64,000 nucleotides of DNA, taken from Laetmonice hystrix. Lineage: Eukaryota. The position numbers and the translations under genes were made by a program. The notes below the pieces were generated by a model that was given only the letters and a program-made list of their open reading frames with translations, made no database searches and had not been told where the DNA came from. Where the stretch lies: NCBI GenBank assembly GCA_965235115.1, contig OZ249437.1, positions 33,542,001 to 33,606,000 of the forward strand, read 5' to 3'. This document shows, piece after piece, positions 3,855 to 57,399 of this stretch; position 1 is the stretch's first letter, and every line of letters begins with the position of its first letter.

Positions 3855-4077
3855 GTGAGAAATTTGCAGAGTGTGCTAATTCTTGTGGTGTTAAAATTCC
3901 TTGTTGGATCACCTGTTCTTACTAGATTCACTACCAGGATTGGCATCTCTGTAAGGCCTAATGTTAAAAGTAATATTTTGTTTGTTCTTTTTGTCTTCCA
4001 CAGTAAACTGGGCATTGTTCTCACTGCTGTTGTCGTTGTTGAATGTTCTGGATGCACATTCATATATTGACTTTCAG

Positions 4078-7000
4078 GAGGCTAGATTAGAACAGGTTGA
4101 TATGGAAACAGCATCAGTTCTGGATCAACGAACTGGGCAACTCATCCCTGCAACCCTTGCAGCAGAGCAGGGGATTCTGGATTCAAAGACGGGTGAAACC
4201 ATCGATCCAGCAACAGGCAACACGTTGTCTCTCTCGCAGGCAGTCAAGAAAGGAATTCTTGTCAAGTCAACAGAATCAGAGAGACCACTGTCTGAGGCAT
4301 CAACAGTGTCTCAAGAGACAAAGGAGTTGACACCACTCCGCATAACAGAGAGTTCTGATGAGGCAACCATTGAGCGACCAGCCAAGGTCAGCAAGCGTGA
4401 CCCGGCCCAAGTAGTGGTCAGTGAAACCACATCATATACAAGAAGTGACCTTTCAACACCTGAGATTCTTTCGAAAAAATGTGTTACACCTGAGGAAGGC
4501 ATGTCGTTAGCTGAGGCAGTAGAATCAGGTAGTATTGACCCCAAAAATGGCAGTTTCACTGACCAAGTAAGTGGTACTGAAATGCCGTTAAAGGATGCTC
4601 TACAAAAGGGTTTTATTCGTGCTGAAACCACTGGTATTCGCGTATCACACTCACTGGACACTATGACTTTAGGTGAAGCCATCACAAAGAATGTAGTTAA
4701 TGTGGAGGAAGGTGTAGTTCTTGATACCAAAACAGGTAAGGGCACCCCAATAGTTGAGGCACACAGGCAGGGTATTGTCGTGGAGATATCTGCACTTCCC
4801 ACTCTAAAAGACCTAGCTAGGAAAGGCCTGTATGATGCAGAGTCAGGAATGGTAGTTGACGATAGTACGTCAATGGAGTATCCCTTGCAGCTTGCCATAG
4901 AAAAGGGTATGGTAGATCGGAGCTCAGTCAAAGTCCAAGACCCAAGCAATGGTGAAACGTTAACCATAACAGAAGCATTTGAAAGAGGCATAATGGACCC
5001 AGAAACAGGGAGCGTGGTAGACAATAGTACAGGGATGTCTGTCTCATTTGCTGAATCTGTAAAGAAGGGACTCCTGGCTGCTGTGGCGGCACCAGTCATA
5101 GGGCCTCTGTATTTAAAGAAACTTGCTGAAGACTACTTTGACAAAAAAACAGGTAAGGTAAAAGACCCGCAGACAGGTAAGTCGATGACCCTTGAGGAGG
5201 CCATTGATGCCAATGTCGTAGACCCTGATTTGATGAGAGTGGTTGATCCTTCCAGCCAGAGAAATGTGTCTCTCTCTGAGGCAATGCGGGGTGGACTCGT
5301 TGACTCAGCGACAGGAGAACTGATGGATGCCACCCTTGGCCGACCAGTACCCTTCCAAGAAGCTGTCACCCAAGGACTCATTGTTGACACAAGAACTGAA
5401 CAGTTTCCAACTACTCCACACATCGAAGAAATTGAGGAACCAGAGGACAAAGAGAAGTTTGTTGAGATGATCAAGGAACTGTTGGAGTCACAGGCATCCC
5501 TTTACGACCCACTAACAGGGAGCACCATGTCTTTAGAAGAAGCCATAGCATCTGGCTTGGTTGATACCGAAAACTGCATGGTAAGGGATCCCAGGACTGG
5601 CGACATGGTAACGATAGGAGAGGCTATAGAACTAGGCATTGTTATCAAACCAGAAGACTTGCTAGGGGAGGATTTCACAGGAATTGAAGAAGTCCTCCGT
5701 GATGATGAAGATGAGTGTGATTTAGCCACGCTTGATGGAAAGGCTGAGAGAAAACAACTGAGACCTGGGCTTGAAATACCACAAGTAGGATTTTCCATTG
5801 TAGAAGCCATTCGAATGGGAATCTATGAGCCACAGTCCAATCTCGTGACACACCCAACCACAGACATGCACATGAGGATAACCGAAGCCATGGACATTGG
5901 TCTCATCAATGTTGACAACGCAATGATGTGTGACCCATCTTCTAACCAGACCGTTGCTTTTGGTCTCCTCATGGAGATGGGACTGGTTGACCTCAATAAC
6001 GGGACTGTTCAGGAATCAACAGGCCAGCATATCCGCCTTGAGGATGCTGTAGACCGGGGATACCTCTTTGACGGCAAACAGTTGCCTGAACCAATGTCAC
6101 TGCTAACTATGATTGATGAAGGATACTACAATGTCGAGACAGGCCAGTTCATGGATCCCTCAAATGAAGAAATGATTTCATTGAAGCAGGCTTTAGATCG
6201 AGGCGTGTTGGACGACACGTCAGCAGTGCTCAATGATTCCAAGACTGGTGAAGTGATGAACTTAAAAGATTCCATTAAAGCAGGAATTGTCAACAGCAAA
6301 ACTGGTTATCTCAAGGACACTGCATCCCATGAACTAATCCCCTTCACAGAAGCTCTCGAGCGAAACATATTGATAGCCCGACCAATGTCTATCGCAACAG
6401 CAATAGACATTGGGCTCTTCAACGAAACTACCTCCAAGTTCCTGGACCCCACCTGCCACAGGTTCTTCACTCTCCAAGAAGCCATGGAAGAGGGCCTCAT
6501 AGACACTCTGTCTACCATTGTGAACCCTGCTACAGGTGAAGAGATGGCCCTTGCACGGGCCACTGCTTGCGGAGTTCTGGATGCTAGGCATGGCAATGTC
6601 ATCAATGTCCATACGGGTGAAACATTCTCTCTCAGAGCCTCCATGCGAAGACGAAAGTCTGCAAAGAAGGGCATGTCTGTTATCGAGGCAGTGGACAAGG
6701 GCTTGATGGGTGCTGCTAACACCATAATGGACCCTGAGTCCCAGACTGAGGTTAGCTTACAGGAGGCCGTGGCTGATGGAATTCTTGAGTCCGAGTCTTA
6801 CATAGTCGACCCCGCAACTGGAGACAGAGTAACATTGAGTGAGGCTGTGGATGAAGGCATCCTCGATCTGGCCACTGGCAATGTCATCAACATAAACACA
6901 GGAGAGACAGTCGCATTGTGTGAGAGTGCTTGCCAGCAGCCATATTCTATAGGAGAGGCACTTGAGAAAGGTCTGTACAACCAAATCAGAAACACAGTCA

Positions 7001-10000
7001 CTGATCCAATGTCTGGTAAGGAGGTCACCCTAAGGGAAGCCTTAGAGAGAGGCATTGTTGATCCAAAGTCTAAAATTGTTGATCCTGAGAGCAGACAGAG
7101 GTTAACACTGGAAGATGCAGTACATGAGGGAATCCTTGACCTCTCCAGTGGCATTGTCATTGGATCTAACACCGGGAAGCGTTTGCATATTAGTGAGGCT
7201 CTTCCAGATGAAACAGAAGAAGAGCATGTCGTTGAGGAGTTGCGCCCACTGCTTACCCTGGATCAGGCAATTAGAGATGGACTCTATGATCAAGAAAATG
7301 TTACCATCACCAATCCAGAGACCAAAGAAGTGCTCAGCCTTGAGGATGCCTTGAACCAAGGAATACTGGATCCAGACTCTCAAGTCAGGGATCCACACTC
7401 GAACAAAGCCCTAACCCTTCAAGATGCAGTTGAGAGTGGTGTGATTGATACTAACATGGGCATCATGATTGACACAGTAAGTGGCAAGTCAGTGTCTCTT
7501 GCTGAAGCCTTTGTCAGAGGTCTTGTGGTGGAGTCAGTTGAACCAACTCAGTTGCCACTACCACTGAGAACAGCAGTAGAACAGAACCTGTTCAATGAGT
7601 CCACCGGTCATATCACCCATCCTGACTCTGGTGTCGTCATGAACCTGGAGGAGGCAGTTCAGAATGATGTCATTGCCCAGGACAGCATCCAGATCCGTGA
7701 TCCACACACTGGAAAGTTGACACCGTTTGAGGATGCAGTCGAAAAAGGTCTCCTTGATGTTGAGACTGGGGCAGTCTTTAATCCAGAGACAGGCACAACC
7801 CAGAGTCTGGTCGTGGCTCTTGAAGAAAGGATAATTGTAGAAGGGCCACAACTGCCAATGAGCCTTGAAGAGGCCATAAAACAACATGTGTTCGACCCTG
7901 CCTCTGGACAGGTGACAGATCCTGTGTCAGGTGAGGTGTGCACTCTGGTGGAGGCTGTTGAAAGAGGTCTCCTACTGACCGATACTGTTGTAGTCAGAGA
8001 CCCTAAAACCGATACTGATGTACCCATGGAGGATGCTATCCAACAGGGTATTCTTGATCGGGAGACTGGAGACCTAAAAAACACAACCACAGGAGAAACT
8101 ATCAGCCTGCGGGAAGCCTTAGATGAGGGGCTAGTGGCTGAAGCAGTTGAATCCCATAATGGGGTAGGCGTGGCAGAAGCTGTCAAAGAGGGCCTGTACA
8201 ATCCCATTGATGGCAGGTTCCAGGATCCGTCCAGTGGACAGAAAATGTCTCTGGAAGAGGCAATGGATGCAGGAGTGATCAATCCCAAGCTGACTGATGT
8301 AAGAGTTCCAGGAACTGATAGTGTGGTCCACCTTGATGAGGCTATCCGACTTGGCCTGATTGAGCCAACAGTAGGATTGCTGCAGGACCCTGAATCAGGC
8401 ACTCAGAAAACCATCCTTGATGCTGTGAATGAGGGCATCATCACTGATGTTGTCGATGAGGAGGAACAGGAGCTGGTGGGCGAGCCTGAGGGTCTTAGCT
8501 TACCAGAAGCTGTCGAAGATGGTCTCTTCAATGCAGTGGATGGCACAGTCAGAGACCCGCAGACTGGGAACAAATTGACCTTAGCTGAAGCCATTGAAGA
8601 TGGTATCATAAACAGTGAGAGAACAGCAGTGGTCCATCCTGTTACAAGAAACCTGATTCCACTGGATGAGGCCATTGAAAAGGGCATGGTAGATGCTGAT
8701 AGAGGTGTCCTTGTTGATCCTAAGACAGGCATGGAAATGAGCATTGCTCATGCAGTCTCATCAGGAAAGGTTGTAGAAATTGAACCAGAGAAAGTATCCC
8801 TGAGTTTGCAGGATGCAGTTAGTCAGAACCTAGTTAATCCTGATGGAACCATTTGCGACCCATACAGCGGGCAACCCCTGACATTGAAGGAAGCCCTTCA
8901 GCAGGGTGTTATCAATGCTGCTGACTCGATCATACATCTCCCAGAAAGTGACACCAATTATAGCCTGGAGGAAGCCGTCACACTAGGCATGGTAGACACA
9001 GAGTCAGGTACAGTCAAAGATCCTCATACTGGGGTTGTCCTCAGCCTCAGAGAGGCCGTTGCACAAAAAGATGACGAGGAAGAGTGTATGAGTCTTCTTG
9101 ATGCAATAAGAAGTGGAGCCTATGACCCAAGTACCCATAACATAATAGATCCCATCACAAATGAGCAAATGTCACTGAAAGAGGCCATCGACAATGAAAT
9201 CATAGACGTATCAAAGACCCTTGTTAAAGAACCAGACAGTGGACGTATCAGTACCCTTGAGGATGCCATCTTTGAAGGCACATTTGACCCAGATACTGGA
9301 CTTCTGACAGATTCTCGAAGCAATAAGCAAATACCACTCTGTGTTGCTATTGATCAGGATCTCATCCTCAATGCTGATAAACCCAGTCTGAGCCTGCATG
9401 ATGCCCTAAGAGCAGCGTTGTACGATGAGAAAACTGGGGAAATACGTGATCCTTCAACTGGTGAAGGTCTCGGTCTTAATGAAGCCATTGAAAGGGGAGT
9501 GATTGATGCTGACAAGTCAAGCGTGACGGATCCTGTCAGTGGGAACGTGGTTGATTTGATTGAAGCCTTGAATCAGGGCATCATCAATCCAGCTACTGGG
9601 GAGGTGAGGGATCCCAAAACAGGTAAACAGTGGACGTTGTTGGAAGCAACAGAGAATGGGTACATCCAGGAGATTGAGACTAGGAAACCAATGAGCATGT
9701 ACGACGTCTTCCAACAAGATCTCTTTATTGAAGACACAGGGAAAATACGGGATCCCTACACTGCAGAACACCTCACACTGGATGATGCTGTCGACAGGGG
9801 ATTGGTGAATCAAAGCAGCATCAGGGTGAAAGACCTAGAAAGTGGGCAGTTACTGAGTATGGAACAGGCTGTAGATAAGGGGGTCATGGATGCGAAGACA
9901 GGAGATGTAGTGAGTCAAGATGGAGGTACTCTTACCCTGAAAGAGGCAGTTCTGGGAGGGCTAGCTCTTGTGGTCTGCAAAGCGTCAGGGCTTAGCCTGA

Positions 10001-13000
10001 AGGAGGTTATTGAGCAAGGTATGTACAGACCAGACAGCGGGAAGGTGACCCATCCTGACACTGGACAAGAAATGACAGTGCAGGAAGCAATAGACACAGG
10101 GGTGATTGACTCAGACAAGACCAAAATCAGGGACCCACATAGTGGGAGTCTACTCAGTATGGAGGAAGCAAGAGAGAGTGGGTTGATTGACACCAGTGCC
10201 GGGACCGTAGAGGATCCGTATACTGGAAAGTCACTCAGCCTGGGCCAAGCCATGACTAAACATCTCCTCGTGACAACACAGGAGCCTGGTATGTCCTTAG
10301 CAGAAGCAGCCAAAAGAGGATATATTGAACTTGGCAAGGTGCACGACTACAGACAACCAGACCAACCCGGCAGACTCCTTAGCCTCAGTGATGCAATTGA
10401 AAAAGGTCTCATCGACCCAGCACAGACTCTGGTGAGAGACCTGCAGACAGGGGATCTTGTGCCTCTTACTGAGGCTCTTGATTCTGGCCTGGTTGATGAA
10501 GAAACTGGCAGAATCCGCGATCCAGTCACAGGAAAGGAATGGAGCCTTGAGAAAGCTCTTGCAGAAGGACTTGTCATGGATGCTTACCATCCAGTTGGCC
10601 TTGGTCTTGTCGAGGCTGCTGCCCAGGACTGTTATGATCCAGATACAGGTCTTGTTTCACACCCAGTCACACAAGAACAAAAAACGCTTACAAATGCCAT
10701 CACAGCCGGCTGGATTGACCCAACTAAAACTTGGGTAATACTGCCAGGAAGGGAACCATTGGTGCTGAAGGCGGCACTGGAGGAAGGTGTGTTTGATATC
10801 AAGATGGGCTCGGTGAGAGACCCAACGACCGGACAGGTCATCAGGTTCAGGGATGCTGTTAGAGCTGGTCAGTTAATAGATGGTAAGGAGAGCCCCAGCC
10901 TGGTTATGAGTTTGGTAACTCTAGTTAAAAGTGGAGTGTACAATCCTCAAACTACAGACGTAATCATTGACCCAGACGGTGCCAGGATCAATGTGAAACT
11001 AAAGGTGGCAGTAGAGAAAGGGTTGATTACTGTGGAGGGGACTGGGTATCATAACTTTGCAACTAGCCAGACAATGCCCATCCCTGAGGCAGTTGAAAAA
11101 GGATACATAGATCTTGAAAAGGGCTTGGTGAAGGATCCACAATCAGGTGGAATGATCCCACTGGAAGATGCAGTTAGTAAGGGTATAGTAGTAGAGGTAG
11201 CAAAGGAAGACAGAATTGTGGAAGACAGCACAGAACCAAAAGTGTACGATCCAACATGTGATAAAATCAAGGATCCATCCACTGGTAAAGAAATTAGCAT
11301 CACTGAAGCTGTGGAATTAGGGCTTCTTGACCCAGGTAAAACACTTATTAAGTGTTCAGGCACTGAGCAGACTGTAACGCTTCAATATGCTCTGAGAAGT
11401 GGTCTTATAGACAAGGATGTAGGCAGTTCACTCCCTGAAGTAGAACCAGTGGAGAAAGAAACACCTACAGATGAAATCAGCATCACTGAACTGCCTATCT
11501 CAGAAAAAGCGAAGGCTGGAGAAGATGATGTTGATGCACCATCAGTGATTGACAAAGAGATGAAAAAGCAAGCTTCCACAGAAGATCAATCTCCCCAGAG
11601 TGTAGCTGTGACAGTGGACCGTGATCTGAGGGTAGACAGAAGTCAACCTGGGATGACCATCCTAGAGATTGTGACTGGAAACCTCTTTGTTTCACAGACA
11701 GGACAGGTCAGGGACCCAACTACAGGGAAACCTCTTACAATCAAGGAGGCCATTGCCACTGGTATATTGAATGCTGAACGTTCCGAGATCGTTGACCCAG
11801 CAACCCATCAAATTCTGACCCTGGGCAATGCCATCAGTGCTGGCGTTGTGGACCCGGTATCAGGCAAAGTCTTCAATGTCAAGACAGGTAAGGAGTATGC
11901 CCTTACTGATGCTGTTCAGGCAGCTGATGACATGAATGTTAAACCAGCAGGAATGCCCTTGAAGGAGGCTCTTGACAAAGGCCTCATTGACCAAACCACG
12001 GGTAATGTATCTGATCCTAGAAATGGGGAAACCATGACCTTCATTGAGGCCCTGAACAGCGGCGTAATTGACCCTGCCAGCATGATAAGAGATTCAGTGA
12101 CAGGACAGACCATATCCTTGGTTGATGCCGTTGCTGAGGGCATCATTGACAGTAAGACCGGACAGATGAAAGACCCCGACTCTGAAAAGAATATGACCCT
12201 GACTGATGCTTGCACAAGAGGCATTGTTGAAATAGTTGAGGCTGGATCCCAGAAAACGTTGCTTGTAGTGGATACCAAGCCTAAAATGCCTCTGCTTCAG
12301 GCCATAGAGGAATTGTATGATGCAGACACAGGGAGCTTTAGAGACCCATCAACTGGTAAAAACGTGACCATGAATGAAGCCATTGAAACAGGTGTGGTAG
12401 ACGCCACAGGGAGCATTGTCAAGGATCCTCTAACGGGGACATTCATTCCTCTTACTGATGCAGTGACAAAAGTAGTTGATCTTCATAAGGGCAAAGTTAT
12501 TGACCCCACAACAGGTGTGATGGTAGACTTGCAGACTGCTGTCAGTAAAGGGCTGATACGACATCCAGCAGACAGCAAGGAAGTGCCTGAAAGTCTGCTG
12601 CTGTCAGAGGCCTTTGAAAAAGGGCTCTTTGACCCAGAGACGGGAGAGGTCACAGATCCCAATACCGGAAGGAGGATGACTCTGAAAGAGGCTATCCTCC
12701 AGTCTGTCATAGATAGGGATAAGAGCATGATTACAGACCCAGCCACTGGAGATAGCATCAGTGTAAGGAAGGCTATAGATCAAGGCATCCTGGAGGCAGT
12801 CACAGGCCAGATCCTCAATACGAGAACGGGTGGTCACACTCCTCTATATGACGTTTCAGCCTCTCATCCTTTGAGCCTCGCAGAGCTGAAAGCAAGGAAT
12901 CTGATTGATCTAGTAGCAGGGACAGTGACAGACCCAATTGCAAAGAGGACAGTGTCAATTGGTGACGCTATTGGTGTTCTTCTAGATGGCAAGTCCTGCC

Positions 13001-16000
13001 TTGTGCAGGATCCAAGATCTAAAAAATGGATCCATCTTGACACAGCAGTGACATCAAGAGTTGTGGATGTTGACAGGGAAGAGGTTCTCGATGCCGTCTC
13101 TGGAGAGCCAGTAAAACTGCAGGAAGCTTTACAGAAGAATGTCATTGTAGATGTCGTAAGACCTGACCTCAGTCTGACCTATTTCATAGATAGAGGTCTG
13201 TATGACCCGGTTTCTGGCCAGGTCTTTGACATGCGGGATGGCAAGTACAAGACATTGAAGGAAGCCATCAGCTGTGAGCTTTTGAATGGGGACTCGGTCC
13301 CTGTCAGCTCTCTGAAGACCGAAGAAGAGATTATCTCTGAAAAAGAAGATAAAACAGATGACTTAAAGACACAAGAGTCCAAAGAGGTCGAGAGTGACGG
13401 GCAAGTTGCAGATGTCACAGAGTACCCTGTGAGTCAGACTGAAAAATATAAGACATTAGCAGAGAGAGCAAAGACAGTGCTAACTCTGCGAGATGCCATT
13501 GACTCTGGCGCCCTGGACATCAAGACGGGCCAATTAGTCGATCCTAAGACTGGCAAAGCCATGACACTGCAGGAAGCACTTGTGGCAGGTGTGATTGAGC
13601 AGGACTCGGTTCAGGTCAAAGATCGAAAGTCAGGAACCACGCTGCCATTTAGTGAGGCTGTCAAAGCAGGAGTCGTCAACCCCGAGGCAGGCCAATGCCT
13701 GAACACATCCACAGATGAAAGTATGTCTTTTGCTAAAGCTCTGGCAGTTGGAATGCTTGAACCTGTTGCCTTCCTCACCTTACAGCTGGCCCTAGACAAA
13801 GGTCTGATTGATGCCTCGACTGGAGAAGTTGAAGATCCACATTCGGGTAAAAAGGTCATGCTGAAAGAGGCCGTCAAGTCACGTCTCATTGATCCATCTG
13901 GTACATTTGTCCGTGACCCCAAGAACAGCAAACTGATAACTCTGGAAACGGCCATAGAGAAAGGTGTGGTTGATGGCAAGACGGGAGATATCCAAGATCC
14001 GTGTGGCCAGGCTGTGCCGCTGACCAAGGCCATCGGCTTCATTGTGGAAGTCGAGAGACCGTACAACAGCAGCCTTCCCACGCTGCTAGAGACAGGCTTG
14101 TACAACACAGACACATGTATGATATATGATCCCAGTGCTGGCAAAGAGGTCTCTTTGAGGGAAGCAATTGATGGAAAAATGGTAGACCCTAGGAAAACTC
14201 TTGTTATGGATGGGAAATTAGCATGTAGGATTCCACTTGAGGAAGCAATGCAGAATGACATACTGGATGCAAACACATGCAGAGTCACCGATCCAAGGTC
14301 AGGGAAAGGGTTGGCCTTAGAGGAAGCTGTTTCAAAAGGAGTAGTGTCTCAACCAAAGGATTATGCCCTAACCTTGGCAGAGGCCTTGACAGAATGTGTC
14401 CTCAACGAAGCAGCAGGCACTGTCTATAACTGCGTAACAGGGCTGTATGAACAGCTAGATGATGCCCTGAAATCTGGAACCATTGATGGGCGCCAAACCC
14501 AGGTGAAGGACAATGAGACAGTATCATACATTCCCTTGAGTACAGCCCTAGAGAAGGGCGTCATTAACTCAACCACTGGCAGAGTCAAAGACAAGTCTGG
14601 CAAGGAATTCACAATTAAGGAGGCCCTTCTCAAAGGCCTTATAATTGAAGGCACGTGCCCTACAAGGTCCATCCAGCAAGCTTTGGAAGATGACCTTTAT
14701 AACCACACAACAGGTAGATTCATTGACCCCAAGACTGGAACAGAGATGACTCTACAGGAGGCCATTGCAGCAGGTGTGATTGATGATACGGCACCTCTGC
14801 TCCAAGACCCACAGACTGGTAGGCACTTGACACTTGGAGATGCTTTGAATCAAGGCTTGATTGATGGGTTGTCAGGAAAAATGAAAGACCCTAAAACAGA
14901 ACTTAGCATTGACATTGCAGAAGGCCTTCAAAAGCCTCTTATTGTGTCAGACACAAAACCAACACCAACACCAACACCAGATGCGACCACCAAAGAAATC
15001 TCCTCAGAGACAGACACAGATTCAAAGGCTGAGATTGAAGGTCCTCAAACAGTTACAGATGAAGCCACTGACCTAAAGAAAAAATTAATGAAAGATCCAA
15101 CAACTGGGGAGTCTCTTGACTTGGATGACACAAGTGAAAAACAAACTGGAGAAGAAGATTCAAGTAAAGACAACACCCTAACTCCAGAAGAAGTATCACC
15201 AGTAGGCTCTCCTCTAGATGGTCATGTTAGAGTAAGAGCTGAACCTCTAGGTCTGAGTCTGGAGGAGGCATTGAACAGGGGCCTGCTGGATATTGATACA
15301 GGAAAAGTGGAAGATCCAAGTACTGGAAGGGAGATGTCACTAAGAGAGGCAATCAATGAAGGCCTCATAAGAGATGCCAGAACAAAACTTACAGGGGCAC
15401 ATGGTGTGAGTGAAGTGACCTTACTGGAAGCTCTTGAAAAAGGTCTGATTGACCCTGACACCTGCGAGTTAATGGACCCCAGAACATCAAGAAAGATCAG
15501 TGTAATTGAAGCTGTACAGCAAGGTCTAATAGTAGAGGCCAAGCAGCCTAAGATGAGCATGTCAGAGGCTCTGCAAAGTGGGCTCTACAATCCACAAACT
15601 GGGACGGTCAGAGACCCCGTAACTGGTCAGCAGAGGTCTCTTCTCGAGGCTATCGATGAGGGGATTATAGATGCAAGCAAACCAATATTGGACGATGTGT
15701 CACATAGCAGGCTTACGTTAGGGGAGGCCCTGACAGATGGAGTCATAGACTCTGAATCCGGTGAGGTAAAGGATCCAACTATTCTCGCAGCGATGCATCA
15801 TCTTGCAAGCAGAAAAACACTTGTTCCAGTGCAAGAAACACCTTCCGTCATAGGCGATGAAGCCCCAAAACGGGTTCGCAAAGCAATCACAATCCATGAG
15901 TCACTTCGGGTGAAAGTTCTCAATCCATTATCAGGATTAGTAACTGATCAAAGCACGGGAAAGCCTGTGACCCTTAGTGAGGCAGTTCAGAAGGGCATCA

Positions 16001-19000
16001 TCAATCCTGATTCCTTAAAAGTAAGGGATCCACGTGAGGACAAACTGATCAACCTCAAGGATGCATTCCACAGAGGAATCATTGATCCTCAAAATAGCCA
16101 ACACAGAGACCCAGTCACCGGCCAGACTTTGAAGCTGAAAGAGGCACTTGACTTAGGAGTGGCTCTCATGACAGACAGCGACAAGTCCTGGAGTATTGAG
16201 GAAGCCTTGAAGGAGGGTTTGTACAACCCAGACACAGAAATTGTGACCAATCCTACCACTGGTCAACACATGAAGCTCAAGGATGCCATCGAGATAAGAC
16301 TAATAAATGCCAGCCGTAGTAATCTCCGGGACCCGAGCACTGGAAGACTGAAACCCCTGGACCAAGCCATCAAGGAGGGAGTTGTGGTGGTTGGTGAGGG
16401 TGACCTGAAGGGGGCTCCTGCTGCTGTAACGGTGAAGGAGGCTCTCAAACAAGGTATGATAGTGGCAACCATGCTACTGGCAGATAGCCATGAGGATCCC
16501 TTTAAGGTTGCCACCAGAAAGCTATCTACACAACTCACAATGACAGTCCATCGTAAAATATCTGCTGCCTATGGAAAACAGCCGGAAATCAACCTGGAGG
16601 AGGCCATCCACTCTGGGATCATTGACCCGACCCGTATGATTGTGAAACATCCCATCAGTGGTGAATTCATCCCCATGACCGACGCCATCTCTGAGGGCAT
16701 TGTGGATCTTTCAACTGGCCACTACCACGACATTCAGCATAGGGAGAGCCTGACACTATTAGAATGTTTGGAAAGGGGCATTATCATTGCAGTTGCTGAT
16801 GAAACTGATGTGCAAACAGCCATGGAAAAGGGCCTGTTGGTAGAAGAAGTTGAGCAAGAAGATGAACCAAGCTCACCAGTTGAAGTACCCACAGAGCCTG
16901 CGATGGAAAGTGAAAAGCCAGAAGTGTCTGCTGTAGAGAAAATGAAACAAATAGAGAAAAAGTTGCTCAAAGATGTTGCTAGTGAAACCACAACAGCAGA
17001 GGACTCCTCAGTAGATACACCCATTGCTGACGCCAAGAGGACTGAGTTGACCAAGAAGGATTTATTAACGGGAGAATCTTTGTCATCTGCTGATCCACTA
17101 GATAAGGGTGTAATTGTCAAGGACATAAGACCAACGACCTCGGAACCAAAGGGAATCAGTCTTCACAAGGCCGTCAAGGATGGTTTGTATGACCCAGTAA
17201 CAGGGCGTGTCAAAGATGTAGAGCATAACTGTACCGTCACCCTCCAGGAGGCAATTGATGCTGGTCTCATTGATCCTGTGCAGTCCATCATCCAGGACCC
17301 AGACAGTCATGAGGATCTCAGCCTGCAGGAAGCCATTGACAGGAACCTGGTGGATGGTCAATTCGGAAAGGTGTTTGATCCCAACACTGGAGCCAAGATG
17401 CCCATAAACGAGGCCATCAGGCTAGGTATGGTAGACGCACCAAGGAGTATGGAGGATGAACAAGACGGTGCTGTCCCAGTATTGACAGGTGCTCTTACAC
17501 CAAGGGAACTGCTAGAGAAAGGTCTTGTAGATGATGCCACTGGTCAGCTGACCCATCCCCAAACAGGGAAGCAGTTCACACTAGCTGAAGCCCTTGATAA
17601 GGGTCTTGTGAATACAGCCACCACTGTAGTTAAGGATCCGAACACTGGTCGGTTACTGAACCTGGAGGAAGCTGTCAAGAAGGGCATAGTAGATGGGGAA
17701 TCGGCAGTCTACAACCATCCTACAGGGAAGGAGCCACTCTGCTTCACTGCAGCGATCAAGGAAGGGTTTATAGTGACTTCAGATGAACCAGTTCCACTAC
17801 AGGAAGCCATTTCCAGAGGGTTGTATGAGGCAGAAAGTGGGCTCTTCATTGATCCCAGCACACAGGAAAGGATACCACTTGAAGATGCTGTCTTTGGCGT
17901 GATTGATGCAAATACAACAAGTGTTCTGAATCCTGTAACAAAGGAAACGCTAACACTACAGGAAGCCATGGAATCTGGGCTAGTTGACGGACAGACAGGA
18001 GTGTTCTATACAAAGGGGATGAGTGCAAGTGTACCCCTGAACGAGGCACTGGCCTTAGGTTATGTGTTAGGCTGGGTTGCACGTGGAATTGTAGTACCTG
18101 AAGAACAGAAAGCACAGCCAGATACTTTAGATCTTCAAGTAGAGAAAATGGGTACCGTTACTGAAGCGATCACTGACGACCAACCTCAGGCTGATGCTCT
18201 TACAGACATTCAAACTGTCCTGGAACTTTTGCCAACCACCAAGGAAGGTATGGGACTTGAAGAGGATGCTGGTTCAACCGTGCTTCTTGACCCAGAGACC
18301 TCCAAGCCAGTATCATGGGATGAGGCAGTGAAAAAGGGCATTGTCGACCCATCCACTGGCACAATACTTAAGCCTGCTCAAGGTGAAACAGTTGGGCTAG
18401 AGAAAACGGGCCTAACCATTGGCTACATGGAACCACCGCGATCTGTTGAAGGTCAGACAGCAACTAGTGGGGTTGAAATTGAAAAGCCTGTAGTGCCCTA
18501 TGAGAGATCAGACTCCAAGTATGGAATGTCTCTGGTTGATTCCCTTGACCTTGGACTGTATGACCCAAAAAGAGCTAAGATCACAGACCCAAGCAACAGT
18601 GTGGAACTCTCGCTGGGTGAAGCCATGGATTGTGGGCTGATCAATGATAGCCTCCACGAAGTCGTCAACCCGGTCACAAAGAGAAGGATGGCTGTCGATG
18701 AAGGGGTGAGACAGAAGCTGCTTGATCGCAACCTGACGGTGTTTATCCACCCCGATGGGGAGAACCTTAGCCTAGATGAGGCCAAAAGACGTGGTTACAT
18801 ATCTAAGGGTCCAGATACACCAAAACACCTGTATCTGGTGGATGCCATTGACCAAGGCTTCATTGACAGTCAGACAGGCATGGTAACAGATCCTGTAACT
18901 GGCTCAGCCACACCCATCACCCAGGCAGCAGAAACTGGGCTGCTCGACCTCGACAGTCCACAGGTAAAGGACCCAAGCACTGGAAGGGAGATCACCCTTG

Positions 19001-22000
19001 CTGAAGCAATTGAGCAGGGTATAGTGGACAAACAAACAGGGCAGATTCTCGACCCAACCACAGGATCACCAATCTCTCTCCAAGAAGCAAAGGACAAGGG
19101 AATATTAAAAGAGCACGCTAAGGGGGTCACAATACAGCAAGCCCTGAACACCAGCATCCTGAATCCCAAGACTGGAATGATAACTCATCCTGAAACAGGC
19201 GAGCAGGTCACCATCAATGAGGCCATCAGGAGAGGCATACTGGATGGGGAGTCCCCACAGGTGACGGACCCCTTCATGCAGAGACCAGTTGGGCTTCAGG
19301 AGGCCATTCACAAAGGACTCCTTGATACAGATACAGCCGAAGTGAAGGACCCAAGTGGGAGGTTGCTTGATCTCATGAAGGCTCTACAAGAGGGCTTTAT
19401 CAAGGACCCACCCCCAGGTGTCACTCTCATTGAAACCATACATAAAGGATGGCTAGATCTCAGAACTGGTCTGGTGACAGATCCCATGACGATGAAGCAG
19501 TACAGCCTGAGTGAGGCCATCAAATATGGCCTGATTGATGGGAAGAGATCGATTGTGAAAGATCCGCATAGCAATGAAGAGATGTTGCTGCAGGATGCCA
19601 TACAGAGAGACATTGTTGACGGTGCCACTGGTACAGTAAGGGATTCGCATACTGGAGAGCTTGTATCTCTTGAAGATGCTTACAACCGAGGCTTGCTTAC
19701 ATCTGATGAAGCTAGAGCAGGGTTGACGGTTCAGGATGCGTTAACTAAGACTCTTGCAGCTGAGGAGGAAATGTTTGCTGAAGCAAGCCAGAAGAAGGAA
19801 AAGACTGAGAAAGTGGTCGACATTGTCAGAGATGCAATCATGACACCAGTAGCAGGAAGCATGGTGACGCTTGATAAAACAGTAGATATTGCCCCTAAAC
19901 CTGAAACAAAGCCAGAGGGCCAGAGACCTGCCATGGAGGTTGATGAATCATTGGAAGTCACTGAGGACAAACCTAAAGCACAGTCAGAGGTCCAGAGACC
20001 CGCCACAGAAGATAGTATGACTCTTGATGAACCAGTGGAAGTCACAGGCGACAAACCTGAAACACGGCCAGAGGTCCAGAGACCTGCTATAGAAGATTTG
20101 GTGACTCTTGATGAACCAGTGGAAGTCGCTGAGGACAAACCTGAAACACGGCCAGAGGTCCAGAGACCCGCCACAGAAGATAGTATGACTCTTGATGAAC
20201 CAGTGGAAGTCACAGGCGACAAACCTGAAACACGGCCAGAGGTCCAGAGACCTGCTATAGAAGATAGTGTGACTCTTGATGAACCAGTGGAAGTCACAGG
20301 CGACAAACCTGAAACACGGCCAGAGGTCCAGCAACCTTTTACAGAAGACATGGTGACTCTTGATGAACCAATGGAAGTCACAGGCGACAAACCTGAAACA
20401 AAACCAGAGATCCAGAGACCCGCCATGGAAGGTGAGGTGACTCTTGATGAAACAGTGGAAGTCACAGACAACAAACCTGAAACCCAGCCAGAGGTCCAGC
20501 GACCTTTTACAGAAGACACAGTGACTCTTGATGAACCAATGGAAGTCACAGGCGACAAACCTGAAACAAAACCAGAGGTTGAGAGTCCTGCTACAGAAGA
20601 TGCAGTGGCTCTTGATGAACCAATGGAAGTCACTGAGGACAAACCTAAATCACGACCAGAGGTCCAGCGACCTGCTACAGAAGATAGCGTGACTCTTGAT
20701 GAACCAGTGGAAGTCATAGGTGACAAACCTCAAACACGGCCAGAGGTCCAGAGACCTGCTACAGAAGATATGGTGACTCTTGATGAACCAGTGGAAGTCA
20801 CTGAGGACAAACGTGAAACACAGCCAGAGGTCCAGAGACCTGCTACAGAAGATAGCGTGACTCTTGATGAACCAGTGGAAGTCACAGGCGTCAAACCTGA
20901 AACACGGCCAGAGGTCCAGAGACCTGCTACAGAAGATATGGTGACTCTTGATGAACCAGTGGAAGTCACTGAGGACAAACGTGAAACAAAGCCAGAGGTC
21001 CAGCGACCTGCTACAGAAGATAGTGTGACTCTTGATGAACCAGTGGAAGTCACAGGCGTCAAACCTGAAATACGGCCAGAGGTCCAGAGACCTGCTACAG
21101 AAGATATGGTGACTCTTGATGAACCAGTGGAAGTCACTGAGGACAAACCTGAAACACGGCCAGAGGTCCAGAGACCTGCTACCGAAGACACGGTGACCCT
21201 TGATGGAAGAGTGGAAGTCACAGATGATGAACCAGTGGAAGTCACCGTGGACAAACCAGGAACCCAGCCAGATATCCAGAGACCTGCTACAGAAGATGCG
21301 GTGGCTCTTGATGAACCAGTGGAAGTCACCGTGGACAAACCAGGAACCCAGCCAGAGGTCCAGAGACCTGGTACAGAAGAAATGGTGACTCTTGATGAAC
21401 TAGTGAGAGTCACTGAGGACAAACCTGAAACACGGCCAGAGGTCCAGAGACCTGCTACAGAAGACACGGTGACCCTTGATGGAAGAGTGGGAGTCGCAGA
21501 TGATAAACCTGAAACACAACCAAAGGTCAAGGATGCCTCAGCCAAAGATGATGTAGATGGCGATCTTGATCAGCTTGAAACCAAAGCTGTTGACAAAGAG
21601 ACCATGGAGCGAAAGAAGAAGGACCTGGAGTCAACGACATGGGCAAAGGATGATAATGCAGAGGATGCCGAGAAACCTTTAGCAGGAATGGAGGAGAGCC
21701 AAGGGGTTTCTGTACAAGACTTGCTGACAGGTGTTGCTGTAGTTGAAAAAGTAATTGATACTGAGGTCAGCATTACGGAGGACAAACCATCGGAAAAGGA
21801 AGAAGTTATTGAAATTGACAAGTCTCCAGTTGATGCAGCAGCTGCAGTCGACACTGAAACGGTCAAAGATGTTGTAGGCAGGGATGAAATTCAAACCAGG
21901 GAATCTCCCCCCGAGACCCCATATGAACGACATGCGTTAACTTTCTCGGAGGTATTAGGTCAAGGACTGTTTGATCCCAGAACAGGTAAAATCCAAGATG

Positions 22001-24834
22001 AATACAGCGGAAAAGAACTAAGTATAGCCAAGGCCATTGAAAGTGGCTTGCTTGACAGAACTTCATCCATAATGGTTGATCCAAAGACAGGAAAACAAAC
22101 AAGTGTACAAGATGCTATTGATTCTGGCAGCCTGGATGGTGAAACAGCAGAAGTGAAAGTTTCTCAAACTGGAGAAGTTCTCTCCCTTGATGAAGCAAAA
22201 CGGAAAGGTGTGGTTGAACTTATCAGACCAAAGCCTGCATTTAATATAATTGAAGCTCTCAAGCAGGACTTGATTGATGCATCTGGAAAAGTAAAAGATC
22301 CTGTAACACAAAAGCAGTACAACTTGGCTGAAGCAATTCATGTTGGACTTGTTGACAGCACACAGACTGAGATTGTTAATCCCTTGACAGGTGAAACCCA
22401 AAAACTGACTGAGGCGTTGGAGAGTGGTGTTATCAATGTGGATGAGGGTACAGTTTATGACACAGAACATGACCAACACTTGTCCCTCACTGATGCTGTA
22501 AAGGCAGATATTCTGATGCAGATCCCAAGTCTGACAATCCTTGAAGCCCTGCATCAAGGACTGTTGGATCCCAAAACTGGGGCATTCAAAGAACCTGTCA
22601 CAGCCAAAGAACGCACCCTAAGTGAAGCCATCAAAACTGGTTGCCTTGATAGTAAGAGGCCAGCGTTGATAGACCCAGCCACGGGAACGGTGTTGACCCT
22701 GCGGGAGGCCCTGGAGGGAGATGTGATCAATCCTGTCACAGGTTTGATGACAGACCCTGCCACGGGTCTACCAATGCCTTGGGACACTGCCCAGGCTAAG
22801 GGTCTACTGATATCATACGAGGCCACACCGGGGTTAACCCTGTGCGACGCCATGGACCAGGGTCTCTATGATGAGGAAACGGGGAAGATCCAGGACCCAA
22901 GAACTCGAGTATTCCTATCAGTGAGAGATGCGGTGAAATGCGGGCTGCTCAGTGCTGACAAGCCTGAAGTCGTTGATGGTGGTGATGTTATTAGTCTACA
23001 AGAGGCTCTTGATAAAAACTTAGTGAACAGGAAGACAGGGAGAGTCAGGCAACCCCAGACAGGAAAACAAATCCCCCTGCATAAAGCTAGACAGGAAGGA
23101 ATAGTTGTCCCAGTTACACCAAAGAGAGGACTTACAATTATTGAAGCCCTTGATAAAGGCTTAGTTGATCCCAAATCAGGAAAGGTGACTGATCCAGAAA
23201 CGAGAAAAGTGTACTCATTAGCCAATGCAATAACAACAGGGCTCCTAGATCCTGACTCCCAAATGATGGATCCCAAATCACAAGAACCAGTAAGCCTTGA
23301 GAAAGCACTTGATCTGGGAATTATTGATGGGAAGAATGCTAATGTTACAGAGCCTAGCACAGGTAAGCAAATCCCCTTGCATGAGGCCCTAGAGAAGGAT
23401 CTTCTCAAAGAGAAACAACGCACTAGTCTAACTTTCTCAGAGGCCATAGAACAGAAGTATTTCAATCCAATGACAGGGAAGGTGTCAGACCCAGAGTCAG
23501 GTAAAGAATACAACATCCAAGAGGCTATCAAGGCAGGAATTTTAGATGGGGAAAGGTCTAAAATAGTCGACCCAGCTACAGGTGACAGTAAGAGTCTGCA
23601 GGAAGCTTTGAATGATGGGATATTGGATCCTGACAGTGGGAGAGTCCGAGATAGCAGGAACGATGAAAAGGTTGTTCTTAGTGAAGATGTTAGTGATGAA
23701 CCTGAGAGTATCAGGACTACGTTAGGACTCACCTTAGCTTTAGCTGTAGAAGCAGGATTCATAGACCCAAAAACAGGCATGGTCAAAGATCTAGGGAGTG
23801 GGAGGGAGATGCAGCTTAAGGAGGCAGTCAAGGCAGGCATTCTTGACGGTTCAGTAGAGGAGATTGTTGATCCAATCAGAAAGAAGTCGGTAAGTCTGGG
23901 AGATGCCCTGAGGACAGGGCTCATAGATGAAGCCTCAGGTTGCCTTGATGACCCGATCACCAAGAGGCTCATTCCCCTAGACCGAGCTGTAGAGACAGGG
24001 CTGGTTCTGGAGGTGCAGCCAACCATTCCAGTGGAGAAAAGTTCTCCAGTAGGTTTCACCATTAAAGAAGCCCTAGATAGGAACATCCTCGATCCAACAA
24101 CTGGTTTGTATACAAACCCAACAACAGGGGAGAAGTTTAATTTTGGTGAAGCTACTGCCAAAGGCTTGTTAGACGCAGTGTCTCCTCAGGTGTACGACCC
24201 AGAAACTTGTAATTCAGTGTCACTTCCAGAAGCTATTGAGAAGGGCTTGGTGACTGAAACTGGTGGCCAAGTCAAAGATGTTAGGACAGGAGAACTCCTG
24301 TCTCTTGATGAAGCCTGCAAAAAGGGCTTGATCAAGGGGGTGAAAGGAAAGAAGCCTGGTTCCATGTCTCTACAAGAGGCTATGGCTAAAGGTCATTATG
24401 ACATTGCCAGTGGGTTGTTCACTGACCCTACAACCGGGAAGCAGCATGACTTGGCTAGCGCCATTGTTGCTGGACTCATCGACCCAACACGGCGGAATGT
24501 TTCACCAAAAAAAGTACTCCAGACAGACACTGTGCGTGAAGGTTTTGTTGCAAGAGCTCCACTTCCTGAAGACGTGGGCTATGAGCATGAAGTGGGAGTG
24601 CAAAAAGAACTTGCTGTAGGTTTCACAGCAGCGAAGCCCTTGGAAGGTGTGACAGAAAAGTCTCCACAAGAAGAACTTTCCAAAGGTGAAGATGACACGA
24701 GTGTCAAGGAGATTTCCCCATCAGAGGGCAAGACCTTCTCAGTGGTGTCCGAGGAGCCACAGACAGACATCTTGTTTACCGAAGGCGAGACGCTCAGCTC
24801 TGCTAGTAGTCCAGACGGGGCAAGGGCACATCAG
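4078..24834 (+). CDS. shot: Spectraplakin giant exon B, 20,757 nt / 6,919 codons of plectin-like repeats
   Basis: Acceptor CTTTCAG|GAG (4077/4078), donor CAG|GTAATG (24834/24835), phase 0-0. Uninterrupted ORF (3961-24993 in the track). Confidence 0.88.
19897..21534 (+). repeat. Coding tandem repeat: 18 full copies of an 84-bp (28-aa) unit plus 2 partial copies inside giant exon B
   Basis: Consensus KPETRPEVQRPATEDSVTLDEPVEVTGD. Period 84 nt checked (20041, 20125, 20209). Full units span 19969-21504, one carrying an extra 24 nt. Confidence 0.95.
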
Positions 24835-28993: not shown

Positions 28994-29140
28994 GTGAAGT
29001 TGGATGAGTTGTACGAGCAGCTTACGCAGGACCTGCGTAATCAGCGCAATTGGTTGAGTAACGCCGAGCAACAGTTGCTCAACCAGATACCAGCATGTGA
29101 CAACAGTGCCACACTACAACAGCAGCTTGACGACCAGCGG
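28994..29140 (+). CDS. shot: Spectraplakin exon, first spectrin-repeat exon
   Basis: TAG|VKLDELYEQL...QQLDDQR|GTAAAG, 147 nt, phase 0-0. Confidence 0.85.
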
Positions 29141-29300
29141 GTAAAGTTATCCTTACGTTAGCAGATCTCTCTGATTCTGAATCTCTGGGTTTCATGTAGA
29201 ATGTTAGTGGAGAATTTCTGGAAACAGTAAACTTGAGTAGCATTGAGTAGGCTATAAACCAGTTTCCTTATACCCCTAATAATTTACCACTATGATACAG

Positions 29301-29456
29301 GCATTGTATGGAGAGATAGTAACACACCAGCAACCCATCCTAGCGCTCGTCTACCAGGCCCAGCAACTCCTCGAACACAACAAGGCTGACTTCACTGAGG
29401 AACAGCTCAGCAAACTGGAGAACCTCATTATCGAAGTCAGGAAGAAACTGGAATTG
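29301..29456 (+). CDS. shot: Spectraplakin exon, spectrin repeat
   Basis: CAG|ALYGEIVTHQ...RKKLEL|GTAAGA, 156 nt, 0-0. Confidence 0.88.
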
Positions 29457-44743: not shown

Positions 44744-44750
44744 GTGAGAA

Positions 44751-57390: not shown

Positions 57391-57399
57391 AGACTTCAC

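What the first reader, a model, noticed from the sequence alone, without database searches (positions are those of the whole stretch)
4078..24834. A 20,757-nt single coding exon makes a spectraplakin of well over 11,600 aa
Seen: one stop-free exon of 6,919 codons, phase 0-0, so it can be included or skipped in frame. With exon A and 42 downstream exons it gives about 11,660 aa before the missing N- and C-termini. Established: Drosophila shot and vertebrate MACF1b/BPAG1b carry optional large plakin-repeat exons. From memory these are smaller, and internal exons above 20 kb are very rare. Inference: a titin-scale linker isoform switched on by one splicing decision. The intact 21-kb ORF argues against assembly artefact.
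Basis: partly seen in the sequence, partly recalled or inferred. Interest (0 to 1): 0.75.

Follow-up and report, generated by a model that had tools for sequence, protein, structure and literature searches.

The report
Giant plakin-repeat exon of a spectraplakin
The 20.8-kb stop-free stretch is a real coding exon of a cytoskeletal linker gene (a spectraplakin); with an 11.9-kb sister exon just upstream it would give a protein of about 16,000 residues, roughly twice the largest fly isoform, but whether the whole exon is used, or skipped, in mRNA has not yet been seen.

Summary
Window 3955-24990 is one open frame of 7,012 codons. Exon B (4078-24834, AG acceptor, GTAATG donor) has 6,919 codons in phase 0-0. 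The other five frames of the same stretch hold 101-644 stops.

Exon B encodes Pfam Plectin repeats throughout. There are about 173 short repeats with a 27-residue period, arranged as 57 modules of about 100 aa. A 780-aa repeat-free stretch interrupts them and holds a PEVK-like array of 28-aa units.

The gene carries the defining spectraplakin domains: CH, plakin-repeat exons, spectrin repeats, EF-hand and GAS2.

- Exon A runs 8,070 nt upstream of the window and is 11,925 nt long. The plakin-repeat region is therefore about 10,900 aa and the full protein about 15,500-16,000 aa.
- The mollusc repeat regions are collinear with exon A alone, so exon B looks like a lineage-specific addition. It is shared with the annelid Paralvinella.
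- Unnamed relatives have uninterrupted plakin-repeat frames of 12-18.6 kb.

RNA support is thin. One small cDNA-derived run holds 22% of the sampled words of 15000-24834 and none of the 4.2-kb intron. No junction into or out of exon B, and no skipping, was seen.

It is a much enlarged form of the optional plakin-repeat exon of Drosophila shot (10,497 nt). "Titin-scale" overstates it.

The parts
1..3854 (+). 3' part of exon A, the first giant plakin-repeat exon. The whole exon runs from 8,070 nt upstream of the window (G000:C2:33533930) to 3854, which is 11,925 nt = 3,975 codons in phase 0-0.
   Evidence: The open frame runs from -8109 to 4067, 4,059 codons. The acceptor is tttcag|TATGCT and the donor GAGAAG|gtgaga. 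Pfam Plectin scores E 4e-93 on the window part. The exon is collinear with Paralvinella P0001 aa 1256-4982 and with the whole repeat region of two molluscs.
3855..4077 (+). 223-nt intron between exons A and B. It is not a multiple of 3. If it were retained, the frame of exon A would stop at 4068-4070.
   Evidence: It has gtgaga...tttcag ends and the lowest GC of the region, 0.39. The frame changes from 2 to 0 across it. No RNA read was laid on it.
4078..24834 (+). Exon B, the finding: 20,757 nt, 6,919 codons, phase 0-0. It encodes about 173 short plakin repeats arranged in 57 modules of about 100 aa.
   Evidence: Pfam Plectin scores E 7e-203 and 6e-195 on its two halves. The AF2 model of aa 1040-1400 has mean pLDDT 83.6.
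19897..21531 (+). Array of 19-20 copies of an 84-nt (28-aa) unit that is rich in P, E, V, T and D (DKPETRPEVQRPATEDxVTLDEPVEVTG). It lies inside a 780-aa repeat-free, very acidic stretch of exon B (aa 5185-5965).
   Evidence: TRF reports period 84, 15.3 copies and 85% matches. blastn self-hits are and the translation and composition. Differences between copies are spread evenly over the three codon positions.
24835..24993 (+). Read-through tail. If the donor at 24834 is not used, 52 more codons follow and then a stop at 24991-24993. An AATAAA lies at 25473. This could give an alternative C-terminus.
   Evidence: Nothing was seen in RNA here; the cDNA run has no contig between about 24130 and 29101 (table 8).
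24835..28993 (+). 4,159-nt intron that follows exon B.
   Evidence: Median GC is 0.36. The acceptor is ttgttag|GTGAAG at 28993/28994. It is continuous in the DNA contigs X1-X3 and absent from the cDNA run X4.
28994..31351 (+). First exons of the spectrin-repeat rod: 28994-29140, 29301-29456, 29633-29815 and 29960 to about 31351.
   Evidence: Spliced contigs of run X4 give the joints 29140|29301, 29456|29633 and 29815|29960. The joined frame has no stop. Pfam Spectrin scores E 4e-19. Homology to scallop P0103 starts at its aa 3866.
31615..51526 (+). Further rod exons (spectrin repeats), mapped only through homology.
   Evidence: tblastn blocks with P0103, P0120 and P0096. Pfam Spectrin scores E 3e-21 at 38904-39563 and E 7e-20 at 49253-49738.
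60398..61847 (+). C-terminal EF-hand exon (60398-60544) and GAS2/GAR exons (61218-61337, 61668-61847). The coding region continues beyond the window, to about +67400.
   Evidence: Pfam EF-hand_1 scores E 8e-08 and GAS2 E 2e-20. tblastn gives 95-97.5% identity over 40 residues of GAS2.

Best explanation
Exon B is a genuine, translated, giant internal coding exon of this genome's spectraplakin gene, the orthologue of shot/MACF1/dystonin. It is the second of two adjacent giant exons (11,925 nt and 20,757 nt). Together they encode about 10,900 residues of 'short' plakin repeats, placed between the N-terminal actin-binding and plakin domains and the spectrin-repeat rod with its EF-hand and GAS2 microtubule-binding end.

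Each 27-residue unit is a beta-hairpin plus one short helix. The second helix of the canonical 38-residue repeat is missing. Three to four units make a module of about 100 residues. Exon B is a very regular string of 57 such modules, interrupted once by an acidic, proline-rich, probably disordered array of 28-residue units.

Inferred: the region works as a long modular spacer with an elastic insert. It would lengthen the cross-linker and add a junction- or filament-targeting surface, as the smaller plakin-repeat exon does in Drosophila Shot.

Exon A corresponds to the whole repeat region of molluscs. Exon B is an extra block that arose, or was kept, in a lineage that includes annelids.

All exon phases here are 0, so mRNAs with A+B, A only, B only or neither all stay in frame. 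By analogy with shot, inclusion is probably regulated, but that step has not been shown.
For: ORF and splice sites:
-. Exon B has 0 stops in 6,919 codons, against 101-644 in the other frames.

Repeat content:
- Pfam Plectin scores E 7e-203 and 6e-195.
- My own HMM finds 173 repeats in exon B and 81 in the full exon A, with a modal spacing of 27 aa.
- There are 57 modules spaced about 100 aa apart.

Missing helix:
- HMMER alignments to desmoplakin 5dzz need an 11-residue gap per repeat.
- The AF2 model (mean pLDDT 83.6) shows one hairpin and one 6-residue helix per unit.
- The best Foldseek hits are plakin repeat domains (5dzz, 4qmd, 1lm7), but with TM-scores of only 0.1-0.16.

Gene identity:
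- CH, Spectrin, EF-hand and GAS2 are found by Pfam.
- The locus is collinear by tblastn with annelid, mollusc and insect spectraplakins from -46,240 to +67,400.

The sequence is old and diverged, not an artefact:
- There is no DNA-level self-similarity apart from the 84-nt array.
- Exon A and exon B are only about 22% identical.

Exon B as an addition:
- Scallop P0103 and Biomphalaria P0105 align end to end with exon A. In the scallop, the terminal PGF...TG.V.T.QEA motif is followed directly by the homologue of the 28994 exon.
- Paralvinella P0001 covers exon A plus the first 40% of exon B.

Relatives keep such frames open:
- Frames of 4,936 (L001), 4,011 (L011), 4,360 (P0002) and 6,207 (P0005) codons.

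Phases.

RNA:
- Run X4 is cDNA-derived, with three GT..AG joints.
- It holds 0.22 of the sampled words of 15000-24834 and a 210-nt error-free contig at 23921-24130.
- It holds nothing in the intron 24835-28993.
Against: - No read or contig crosses 3854>4078 or 24834>28994, so the joining of exon B to its neighbours rests on sequence logic alone.
- X4 covers only about a fifth of the 3' half of the exon, in short pieces, and none of its last 700 nt. An exon used only in part is therefore not excluded.
- Only 6 kb could be laid, and only one study holds this organism.
- The protein libraries used seem to hold nothing longer than about 8,000 aa. 'Largest' therefore means largest among what could be compared.
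- Orthology of repeat blocks at 22-27% identity is hard to establish. The claim that arthropods lack an exon-B equivalent was not settled; their best hits are in fact to exon B.
- The function (spacer, spring, junction targeting) is inference from Drosophila and from composition.
Confidence: 0.78

Rival explanations
1. Exon B, or exon A, is used mainly as a 3'-terminal exon. The donor is ignored, translation runs on to a nearby stop, and the mRNA is polyadenylated. This would give a plectin-like or VAB-10A-like protein that ends in plakin repeats and has no spectrin rod. The roughly 16,000-aa linker would then be rare or absent.
For: The paper on shot states that in C. elegans the plakin-repeat exon encodes an alternative C-terminus (PMC2173965). 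Read-through at 24834 adds only 52 codons before a stop at 24991, and an AATAAA follows at 25473. Retention of the 223-nt intron would stop exon A's frame at 4068. No junction 24834>28994 was seen.
Against: The cDNA run has no contig between about 24130 and 29101, so there is no sign of a 3' UTR either. Both giant exons end exactly in phase 0 with good donors (GTGAGA, GTAATG), and the next exon starts in phase 0. In insects and in the scallop, plakin repeats and the rod sit in one annotated protein. The two readings do not exclude each other.
Confidence: 0.12
2. The open frame is real, but mature mRNAs usually use internal donors or acceptors, so only pieces of exon B are included. The full 6,919 codons would then seldom or never sit together in one molecule.
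For: [quoted passage not shown] The X4 contigs cover only 22% of the sampled words. A relative (L011) has the equivalent region in three separate open frames of 3.4, 12 and 3.2 kb.
Against: The whole 20.8 kb is kept stop-free and repeat-bearing. There is no AT-rich, intron-like island inside it. Parts that were always spliced out would be expected to decay. The patchy X4 cover fits low depth (5-24x contigs of 150-290 nt), and the flanking rod exons are covered just as patchily.
Confidence: 0.12
3. It is an artefact, or dead sequence: a mis-assembled repeat expansion, or a decaying exon that is open by chance.
For: The DNA runs that confirm the sequence come from one sample. That sample may be the one the assembly was made from, so they are not independent. 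The copy number of the 84-nt array could be wrong.
Against: There are no stops in 6,919 codons where 100-640 would be expected. The only DNA-level internal duplication is the array. There are 173 recognisable repeats with conserved motif positions. Homologous giant frames exist in several other organisms. A cDNA contig lies inside the exon.
Confidence: 0.02

Closest known systems
Drosophila Short stop (shot), plakin-repeat exon and 'gigantic' isoforms (Roper & Brown 2003, PMC2173965)
   Same: A single spectraplakin gene carries a very large exon of plakin repeats between the plakin domain and the spectrin rod. The second helix of the repeat is degenerate or missing, so a canonical 4.5-repeat globular domain is unlikely. 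The exon can be left out in frame. The EF-hand and GAS2 C-terminus is shared.
   Different: Shot has one exon of 10,497 nt with 33 repeats separated by 7-128 residues, and a largest isoform of 8,846 aa. Here there are two exons of 11,925 and 20,757 nt with at least 254 repeats. Exon B is a regular string of 57 modules of about 100 aa with a PEVK-like insert, and the predicted product is about 16,000 aa. For Shot, expression and localisation at adherens junctions were shown. Here nothing functional is known.
Vertebrate MACF1b / BPAG1b (dystonin-b) with internal plakin repeat domains, and plectin/desmoplakin C-terminal plakin repeat domains (PDB 5dzz, 1lm5, 1lm7, 4qmd, 2n03)
   Same: The Pfam family is the same (PF00681). 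The sequence profile of exon B modules hits desmoplakin, plectin and envoplakin repeat domains at E 3e-15 to 7e-06. The hairpin and first helix are conserved.
   Different: The vertebrate repeats are 38 aa long and pack as 4.5 repeats into globular domains with a basic groove that binds intermediate filaments (established knowledge; the fold is described). Here the unit is 27 aa and 11 residues (helix 2) are missing. The global TM-score to the solved domains is only 0.1-0.16. The region is strongly acidic, with a net charge of -572 over 6,919 aa.
C. elegans VAB-10A
   Same: The plakin-repeat exon belongs to the single spectraplakin locus.
   Different: According to PMC2173965, in the worm the exon gives an alternative C-terminus. 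Here the exon ends in phase 0 at a good donor and is followed in frame by rod exons. A terminal use by read-through remains possible (rival 1).
Paralvinella palmiformis hypothetical protein LSH36_68g10066 (P0001, 7,866 aa) and unnamed giant ORFs P0002-P0005
   Same: These are the nearest sequences, at 31-41% identity. P0001 has a CH domain, a plakin domain, then repeats collinear with exon A and the first 40% of exon B. The module type is the same: at least 41 modules in P0001.
   Different: These are automatic predictions that no paper I found describes. P0001 stops inside the repeats. In P0002 and P0005 a single open frame runs across what is the A/B intron here, so the position of the split differs.
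Other very large coding exons (titin's largest exon of about 17 kb; mucin MUC16's central exon of about 21 kb). These figures are from my own memory and were not checked here.
   Same: They are repeat-coding, stop-free exons in the 15-20 kb range within giant structural proteins.
   Different: They belong to other protein families. The comparison only shows that a 20.8-kb internal exon is very rare but not without precedent.

Membership tests
Spectraplakin (shot/MACF1/dystonin/VAB-10) | N-terminal calponin-homology actin-binding domain | tested here: met
   L007:3757-3930 (window -46243..-46070) matches Pfam CH at E 1.4e-09, 38.5 bits against a cut-off of 26. It is 79% identical to P0001 aa 61-116. 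Further CH exons follow at -42048 to -35706.
Spectraplakin (shot/MACF1/dystonin/VAB-10) | Plakin domain (spectrin-like repeats with an SH3) after the CH domains | tested here: inconclusive
   About 17 exon-sized tblastn blocks between -21715 and -8251 are collinear with P0001 aa 261-1261. That part of P0001 carries the precomputed plakin-domain Pfam families PF17902, PF21019 and PF21020. The window's own upstream exons were not scanned against Pfam.
Spectraplakin (shot/MACF1/dystonin/VAB-10) | Spectrin-repeat rod | tested here: met
   Pfam Spectrin scores E 4e-19, 3e-21 and 7e-20 on three exons. About 30 homology blocks lie between 28994 and 51526.
Spectraplakin (shot/MACF1/dystonin/VAB-10) | C-terminal EF-hands followed by a GAS2/GAR microtubule-binding domain | tested here: met
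   EF-hand_1 scores E 8e-08 at 60398-60544 and GAS2 scores E 2e-20 at 61668-61847.
Spectraplakin (shot/MACF1/dystonin/VAB-10) | All parts joined in one transcript | tested here: inconclusive
   The parts share strand, order and phase. Only three rod junctions were seen in cDNA contigs. No junction touching exon A or exon B was observed.
Plakin repeat (Pfam PF00681 Plectin) | Sequence match above the curated threshold | tested here: met
   Scores are 305, 657 and 631 bits against a cut-off of 20.5. The profile also hits the solved desmoplakin, plectin and envoplakin repeat domains.
Canonical plakin repeat domain (PRD; 4.5 repeats of 38 aa, globular, binds intermediate filaments) | A 38-residue unit made of a beta-hairpin and two helices | tested here: not met
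   The modal spacing is 27 aa; only 4 of 252 spacings fall at 37-39 aa. Alignments to desmoplakin need an 11-residue gap in every repeat. The AF2 model has one short helix per unit.
Canonical plakin repeat domain (PRD; 4.5 repeats of 38 aa, globular, binds intermediate filaments) | Globular PRD fold | tested here: not met
   PRDs are the top Foldseek hits, but with TM-scores of 0.08-0.16 and rmsd of 14-25 A. The model's pTM is 0.45, so the packing between modules is itself uncertain.
Canonical plakin repeat domain (PRD; 4.5 repeats of 38 aa, globular, binds intermediate filaments) | Binding of intermediate filaments through a basic groove | not testable with these tools
   The only indication is composition: exon B has a net charge of -572.
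Alternatively spliced cassette exon | Transcripts both with and without the exon | tested here: inconclusive
   The frames allow it, since every phase is 0. No inclusion or skipping junction was seen. One read-laying run of 6 kb was available, and the only cDNA run is shallow.

The most novel reading that the evidence does not exclude
An mRNA that includes both giant exons exists and is translated into a cytolinker of about 16,000 residues (about 1.8 MDa). That would be about twice the size of any characterised spectraplakin. Its second giant exon would be a lineage-specific, separately skippable block of 57 regular 100-residue modules built from a shortened plakin repeat, with a built-in PEVK-like spring. 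This would amount to a new kind of extended rod, made from hairpin-plus-one-helix units rather than globular plakin repeat domains.
Probability: 0.45. Interest if true: 0.6.

Novelty: new variant of a known kind. Interest (0 to 1): 0.5.

Why it matters
Spectraplakins connect actin, microtubules and junctions. What their plakin-repeat region does in invertebrates is still poorly understood.

A gene that has tripled this region to about 10,900 residues, keeps it open over 33 kb and has placed two thirds of it in a separate in-frame exon offers a natural experiment on two questions. One is what the repeat region is for: length, elasticity or targeting. The other is how splicing copes with internal exons of 12 and 21 kb.

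The regular 27-residue units and 100-residue modules also give a clean target for solving the structure of the 'short' plakin repeat. The shot authors could not assign that repeat to the desmoplakin fold.

For annotation, the case shows that gene models in this lineage are truncated or split. The best database relative stops inside the repeats at 7,866 aa.

Tried and rejected
RNA evidence
- The look-up of sequencing runs (kind rna) listed no run on record as RNA.
- Of the four runs listed, X1-X3 proved to be DNA. Their contigs run straight through the 4.2-kb intron.
- Only X4 is cDNA-derived, and it has no contig between about 24130 and 29101 (table 8). The junction 24834>28994 could therefore be neither confirmed nor refuted.
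- Reads were laid on 23900-29899, so 3854>4078 was never examined.

Look-ups that failed or gave little
It had no DNA for P0002. The exon structure of the closest relatives is therefore known only from ORF calls.
- The papers library yielded nothing on lophotrochozoan spectraplakins or on record exon sizes. Figures for other giant exons are from memory.

Statistics that did not discriminate
- An RNY codon-periodicity scan could not separate frame 0 from frame 2 and was dropped.
- The codon-position test on the 28-aa array showed differences spread evenly over the three positions (269/283/289) and a synonymous:non-synonymous ratio of 154:457. The array shows no purifying selection on its residues, only on its frame.

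Questions left open
- A blastp comparison of exon A with exon B gave only about 22% identity in every register, so no ancient large duplication could be traced. The origin of exon B was not resolved.
- The organism could not be named. The nearest homologue is from an annelid.

Rejected
- Assembly artefact or chance ORF (see the rivals).

Full report
OBSERVATION

The stop-free stretch exists as described. Frame 0 is open from 3955 to 24990, 7,012 codons. The genome search reports the same open frame independently. The sequence shows a polypyrimidine tract and AG at 4076-4077 and a GTAATG donor at 24835. Exon B is therefore 4078-24834: 20,757 nt, 6,919 codons, phase 0-0.

In the same 20.8 kb the other two forward frames hold 487 and 644 stops, and the reverse frames hold 101-419. 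Chance is excluded.

GC is 0.47-0.49 all along the exon, against a median of 0.36 in the following intron. The lowest-GC 300-nt window of the whole 33-kb coding block is the 223-nt intron at 3855-4077. No second intron-like island lies inside exon B.

blastn of the block against itself finds nothing except the 84-nt tandem array at 19897-21531. The exon is made of old, diverged repeats and is not a product of mis-assembly.

WHAT IT ENCODES

Pfam Plectin repeats score 657 and 631 bits on the two halves of exon B and 305 bits on the window part of exon A, against a cut-off of 20.5.

An HMM grown from one repeat finds 173 repeats in exon B and 81 in the complete exon A. Their modal spacing is 27 residues, and the canonical spacing of about 38 residues is almost absent.

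A profile of a 361-aa stretch aligned with 33 homologues (A1) hits the solved plakin repeat domains of desmoplakin, plectin and envoplakin at E 3e-15 to 7e-06. Every one of these alignments needs an 11-residue gap, and the gap falls where desmoplakin has its second helix.

AlphaFold2 on the same alignment gives a confident model with mean pLDDT 83.6. Each unit is a beta-hairpin plus one six-residue helix. Foldseek ranks plakin repeat domains first, but with TM-scores of only 0.1-0.16. Local elements are therefore shared while the globular domain fold is not. [quoted passage not shown]

At a higher level, exon B is a regular string of 57 modules spaced about 100 residues apart. Forty-seven modules lie before a single long gap and ten after it. 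Exon A is less regular.

The gap (aa 5185-5965) holds 19-20 copies of a 28-residue unit rich in P, E, V, T and D. The array has a net charge of -94 over 545 residues, and exon B as a whole has -572. Copies differ equally at all three codon positions, so only the frame is conserved there, not the residues. This array was noted earlier in the scan (s1-317283).

THE GENE AROUND IT

Downstream blocks on the same strand match the spectrin rod, EF-hand and GAS2 domain of scallop, periwinkle and damselfly spectraplakins. Pfam confirms Spectrin, EF-hand and GAS2.

I fetched 60 kb upstream. This showed that the frame of exon A stays open back to -8109, which is 4,059 codons. An acceptor tttcag|TATGCT lies at -8071/-8070, so exon A is 11,925 nt = 3,975 codons. 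Further upstream lie about 22 small exons collinear with the N-terminal 1,260 residues of the Paralvinella protein. They include a CH-domain exon at -46243 (Pfam CH).

The preceding exon ends in phase 0, both giant exons are phase 0-0, and the exon at 28994 starts in phase 0.

Adding about 1,300-1,400 residues upstream, 3,975, 6,919 and about 3,500-3,850 downstream gives roughly 15,500-16,000 residues.

The rest of the genome has only small plakin-repeat loci, on C29 and C10, with open frames of 214-657 aa.

COMPARISON WITH RELATIVES

Among 5.8 billion clustered proteins the best match is a Paralvinella palmiformis (annelid) prediction of 7,866 aa, at 31-41% identity. It is followed by unnamed single ORFs of 3,989-6,207 aa and then by hundreds of arthropod and mollusc proteins annotated as MACF1, dystonin or shot.

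- Paralvinella is collinear with exon A (aa 1256-4982) and with the first 40% of exon B (aa 5432-7852). Its model then ends.
- The complete repeat regions of two molluscs are collinear with exon A from its first residues to its last. In the scallop the closing motif (PGF...TG.V.T.QEA) is followed directly by the homologue of the 28994 exon.

The junction of exon A to the rod therefore looks ancestral. Exon B is an extra block lying in what is an intron in molluscs.

Module counts agree with this:

| Group | Modules of about 100 aa |
|---|---|
| Molluscs | 9-20 |
| Arthropods | 20-28 |
| Paralvinella | at least 41 |
| This gene, exon B | 57 |
| This gene, exon A | 15-37 |

With the A1 profile, exon B alone scores 4,715 bits. 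The best of 1.84 billion representatives scores 2,799. Those libraries appear to hold nothing above about 8,000 aa, so this ranking covers only what could be compared.

Uninterrupted plakin-repeat frames are also very long elsewhere:
- 10,497 nt in Drosophila
- about 12 kb in many insect contigs
- 14.8 kb in L001
- 12 kb flanked by 3.4 and 3.2 kb in L011
- 13 kb in P0002 and 18.6 kb in P0005

In P0002 and P0005 one frame runs across the place where this genome has the A/B intron. The 20.8-kb exon is thus the extreme of a series.

TRANSCRIPT EVIDENCE

Four runs of one sample hold the sequence. Laid on 23900-29899, three are DNA, continuous through the intron.

The fourth run, X4, is cDNA-derived. 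Its short contigs carry the GT..AG joints 29140|29301 and 29456|29633, and a loose end that maps to 29960, giving the joint 29815|29960. X4 holds 22% of the sampled words of 15000-24834 and an error-free 210-nt contig at 23921-24130. It holds nothing in the 4.2-kb intron.

This favours exon B being part of processed RNA rather than intron signal, but the evidence is weak. No junction into or out of exon B and no skipping junction was seen.

MECHANISM, WITH STEPS MARKED

Shown:
- a conserved open frame
- the repeat and module architecture
- the domain order of the gene
- phase compatibility

Inferred:
- The two giant exons are spliced between the plakin domain and the rod to give a linker of about 16,000 aa.
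- The 27-residue units form an extended modular spacer with one disordered, acidic, elastic insert.
- Inclusion is regulated, as in shot. There the plakin-repeat forms go to adherens junctions, and the repeat exon is treated as an intron in some cells.

The strongly acidic charge argues against the basic-groove mode of intermediate-filament binding of vertebrate repeat domains. That is inference only.

RIVALS

- Terminal use of the exon by read-through: 52 codons, a stop at 24991 and AATAAA at 25473, with the C. elegans precedent.
- Partial use through internal splice sites.
- Artefact, which is practically excluded.

VERDICT

It is unproven as to the splicing switch, and 'titin-scale' overstates it.

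This is a strongly enlarged, two-exon variant of the known optional plakin-repeat exon of spectraplakins. It is noteworthy for its size, its regular short-repeat modules and the lineage-specific second exon.

Noticed in passing
upstream of the window: G000:C2:33533930-33545854 (window -8070 to 3854): Exon A, cut by the window's start, is itself a giant exon of 11,925 nt (3,975 codons, phase 0-0). It corresponds end to end to the whole plakin-repeat region of molluscs.
   Followed up: yes
window 19897-21531: An array of 19-20 copies of a 28-aa acidic, PEVK-like unit lies inside exon B. Copies differ equally at all codon positions (269/283/289), so the frame is kept but the residues evolve almost neutrally. 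It was noted earlier in the scan as s1-317283.
   Followed up: partly
window 3855-4077 compared with P0002 and P0005: In two unnamed relatives a single open frame runs across the point where this genome has the 223-nt A/B intron. A third relative (L011) has gaps at other places. The intron was therefore gained or lost within this group.
   Followed up: partly
window 52958-59025: A GC-rich block (0.59-0.61) with open frames of 270 and 316 codons lies in the intron between the last rod exon (51526) and the EF-hand exon (60398). The scan noted it earlier as a DIRS retrotransposon (s1-317284). I did not examine it.
   Followed up: no
G000:C29:13210889-13212079 (-) and G000:C10:10449698-10551311 (-): Other, much smaller plakin-repeat loci exist in the same genome, with open frames of 214-657 aa. 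They are probably separate plakin-family genes.
   Followed up: no
window 22866-24161 (-), 19734-21569 (-), 4314-5132 (-): Antisense open frames of 270-440 codons lie inside exon B. They are best explained as a by-product of the biased codon composition: one reverse frame has only 101 stops in 6,919 codons. They are not genes.
   Followed up: partly
protein libraries: No hit in either protein library is longer than 7,990 aa, although many cluster just below 8,000. The libraries seem to be capped near 8,000 residues, so giant proteins such as this one cannot be found in them.
   Followed up: no
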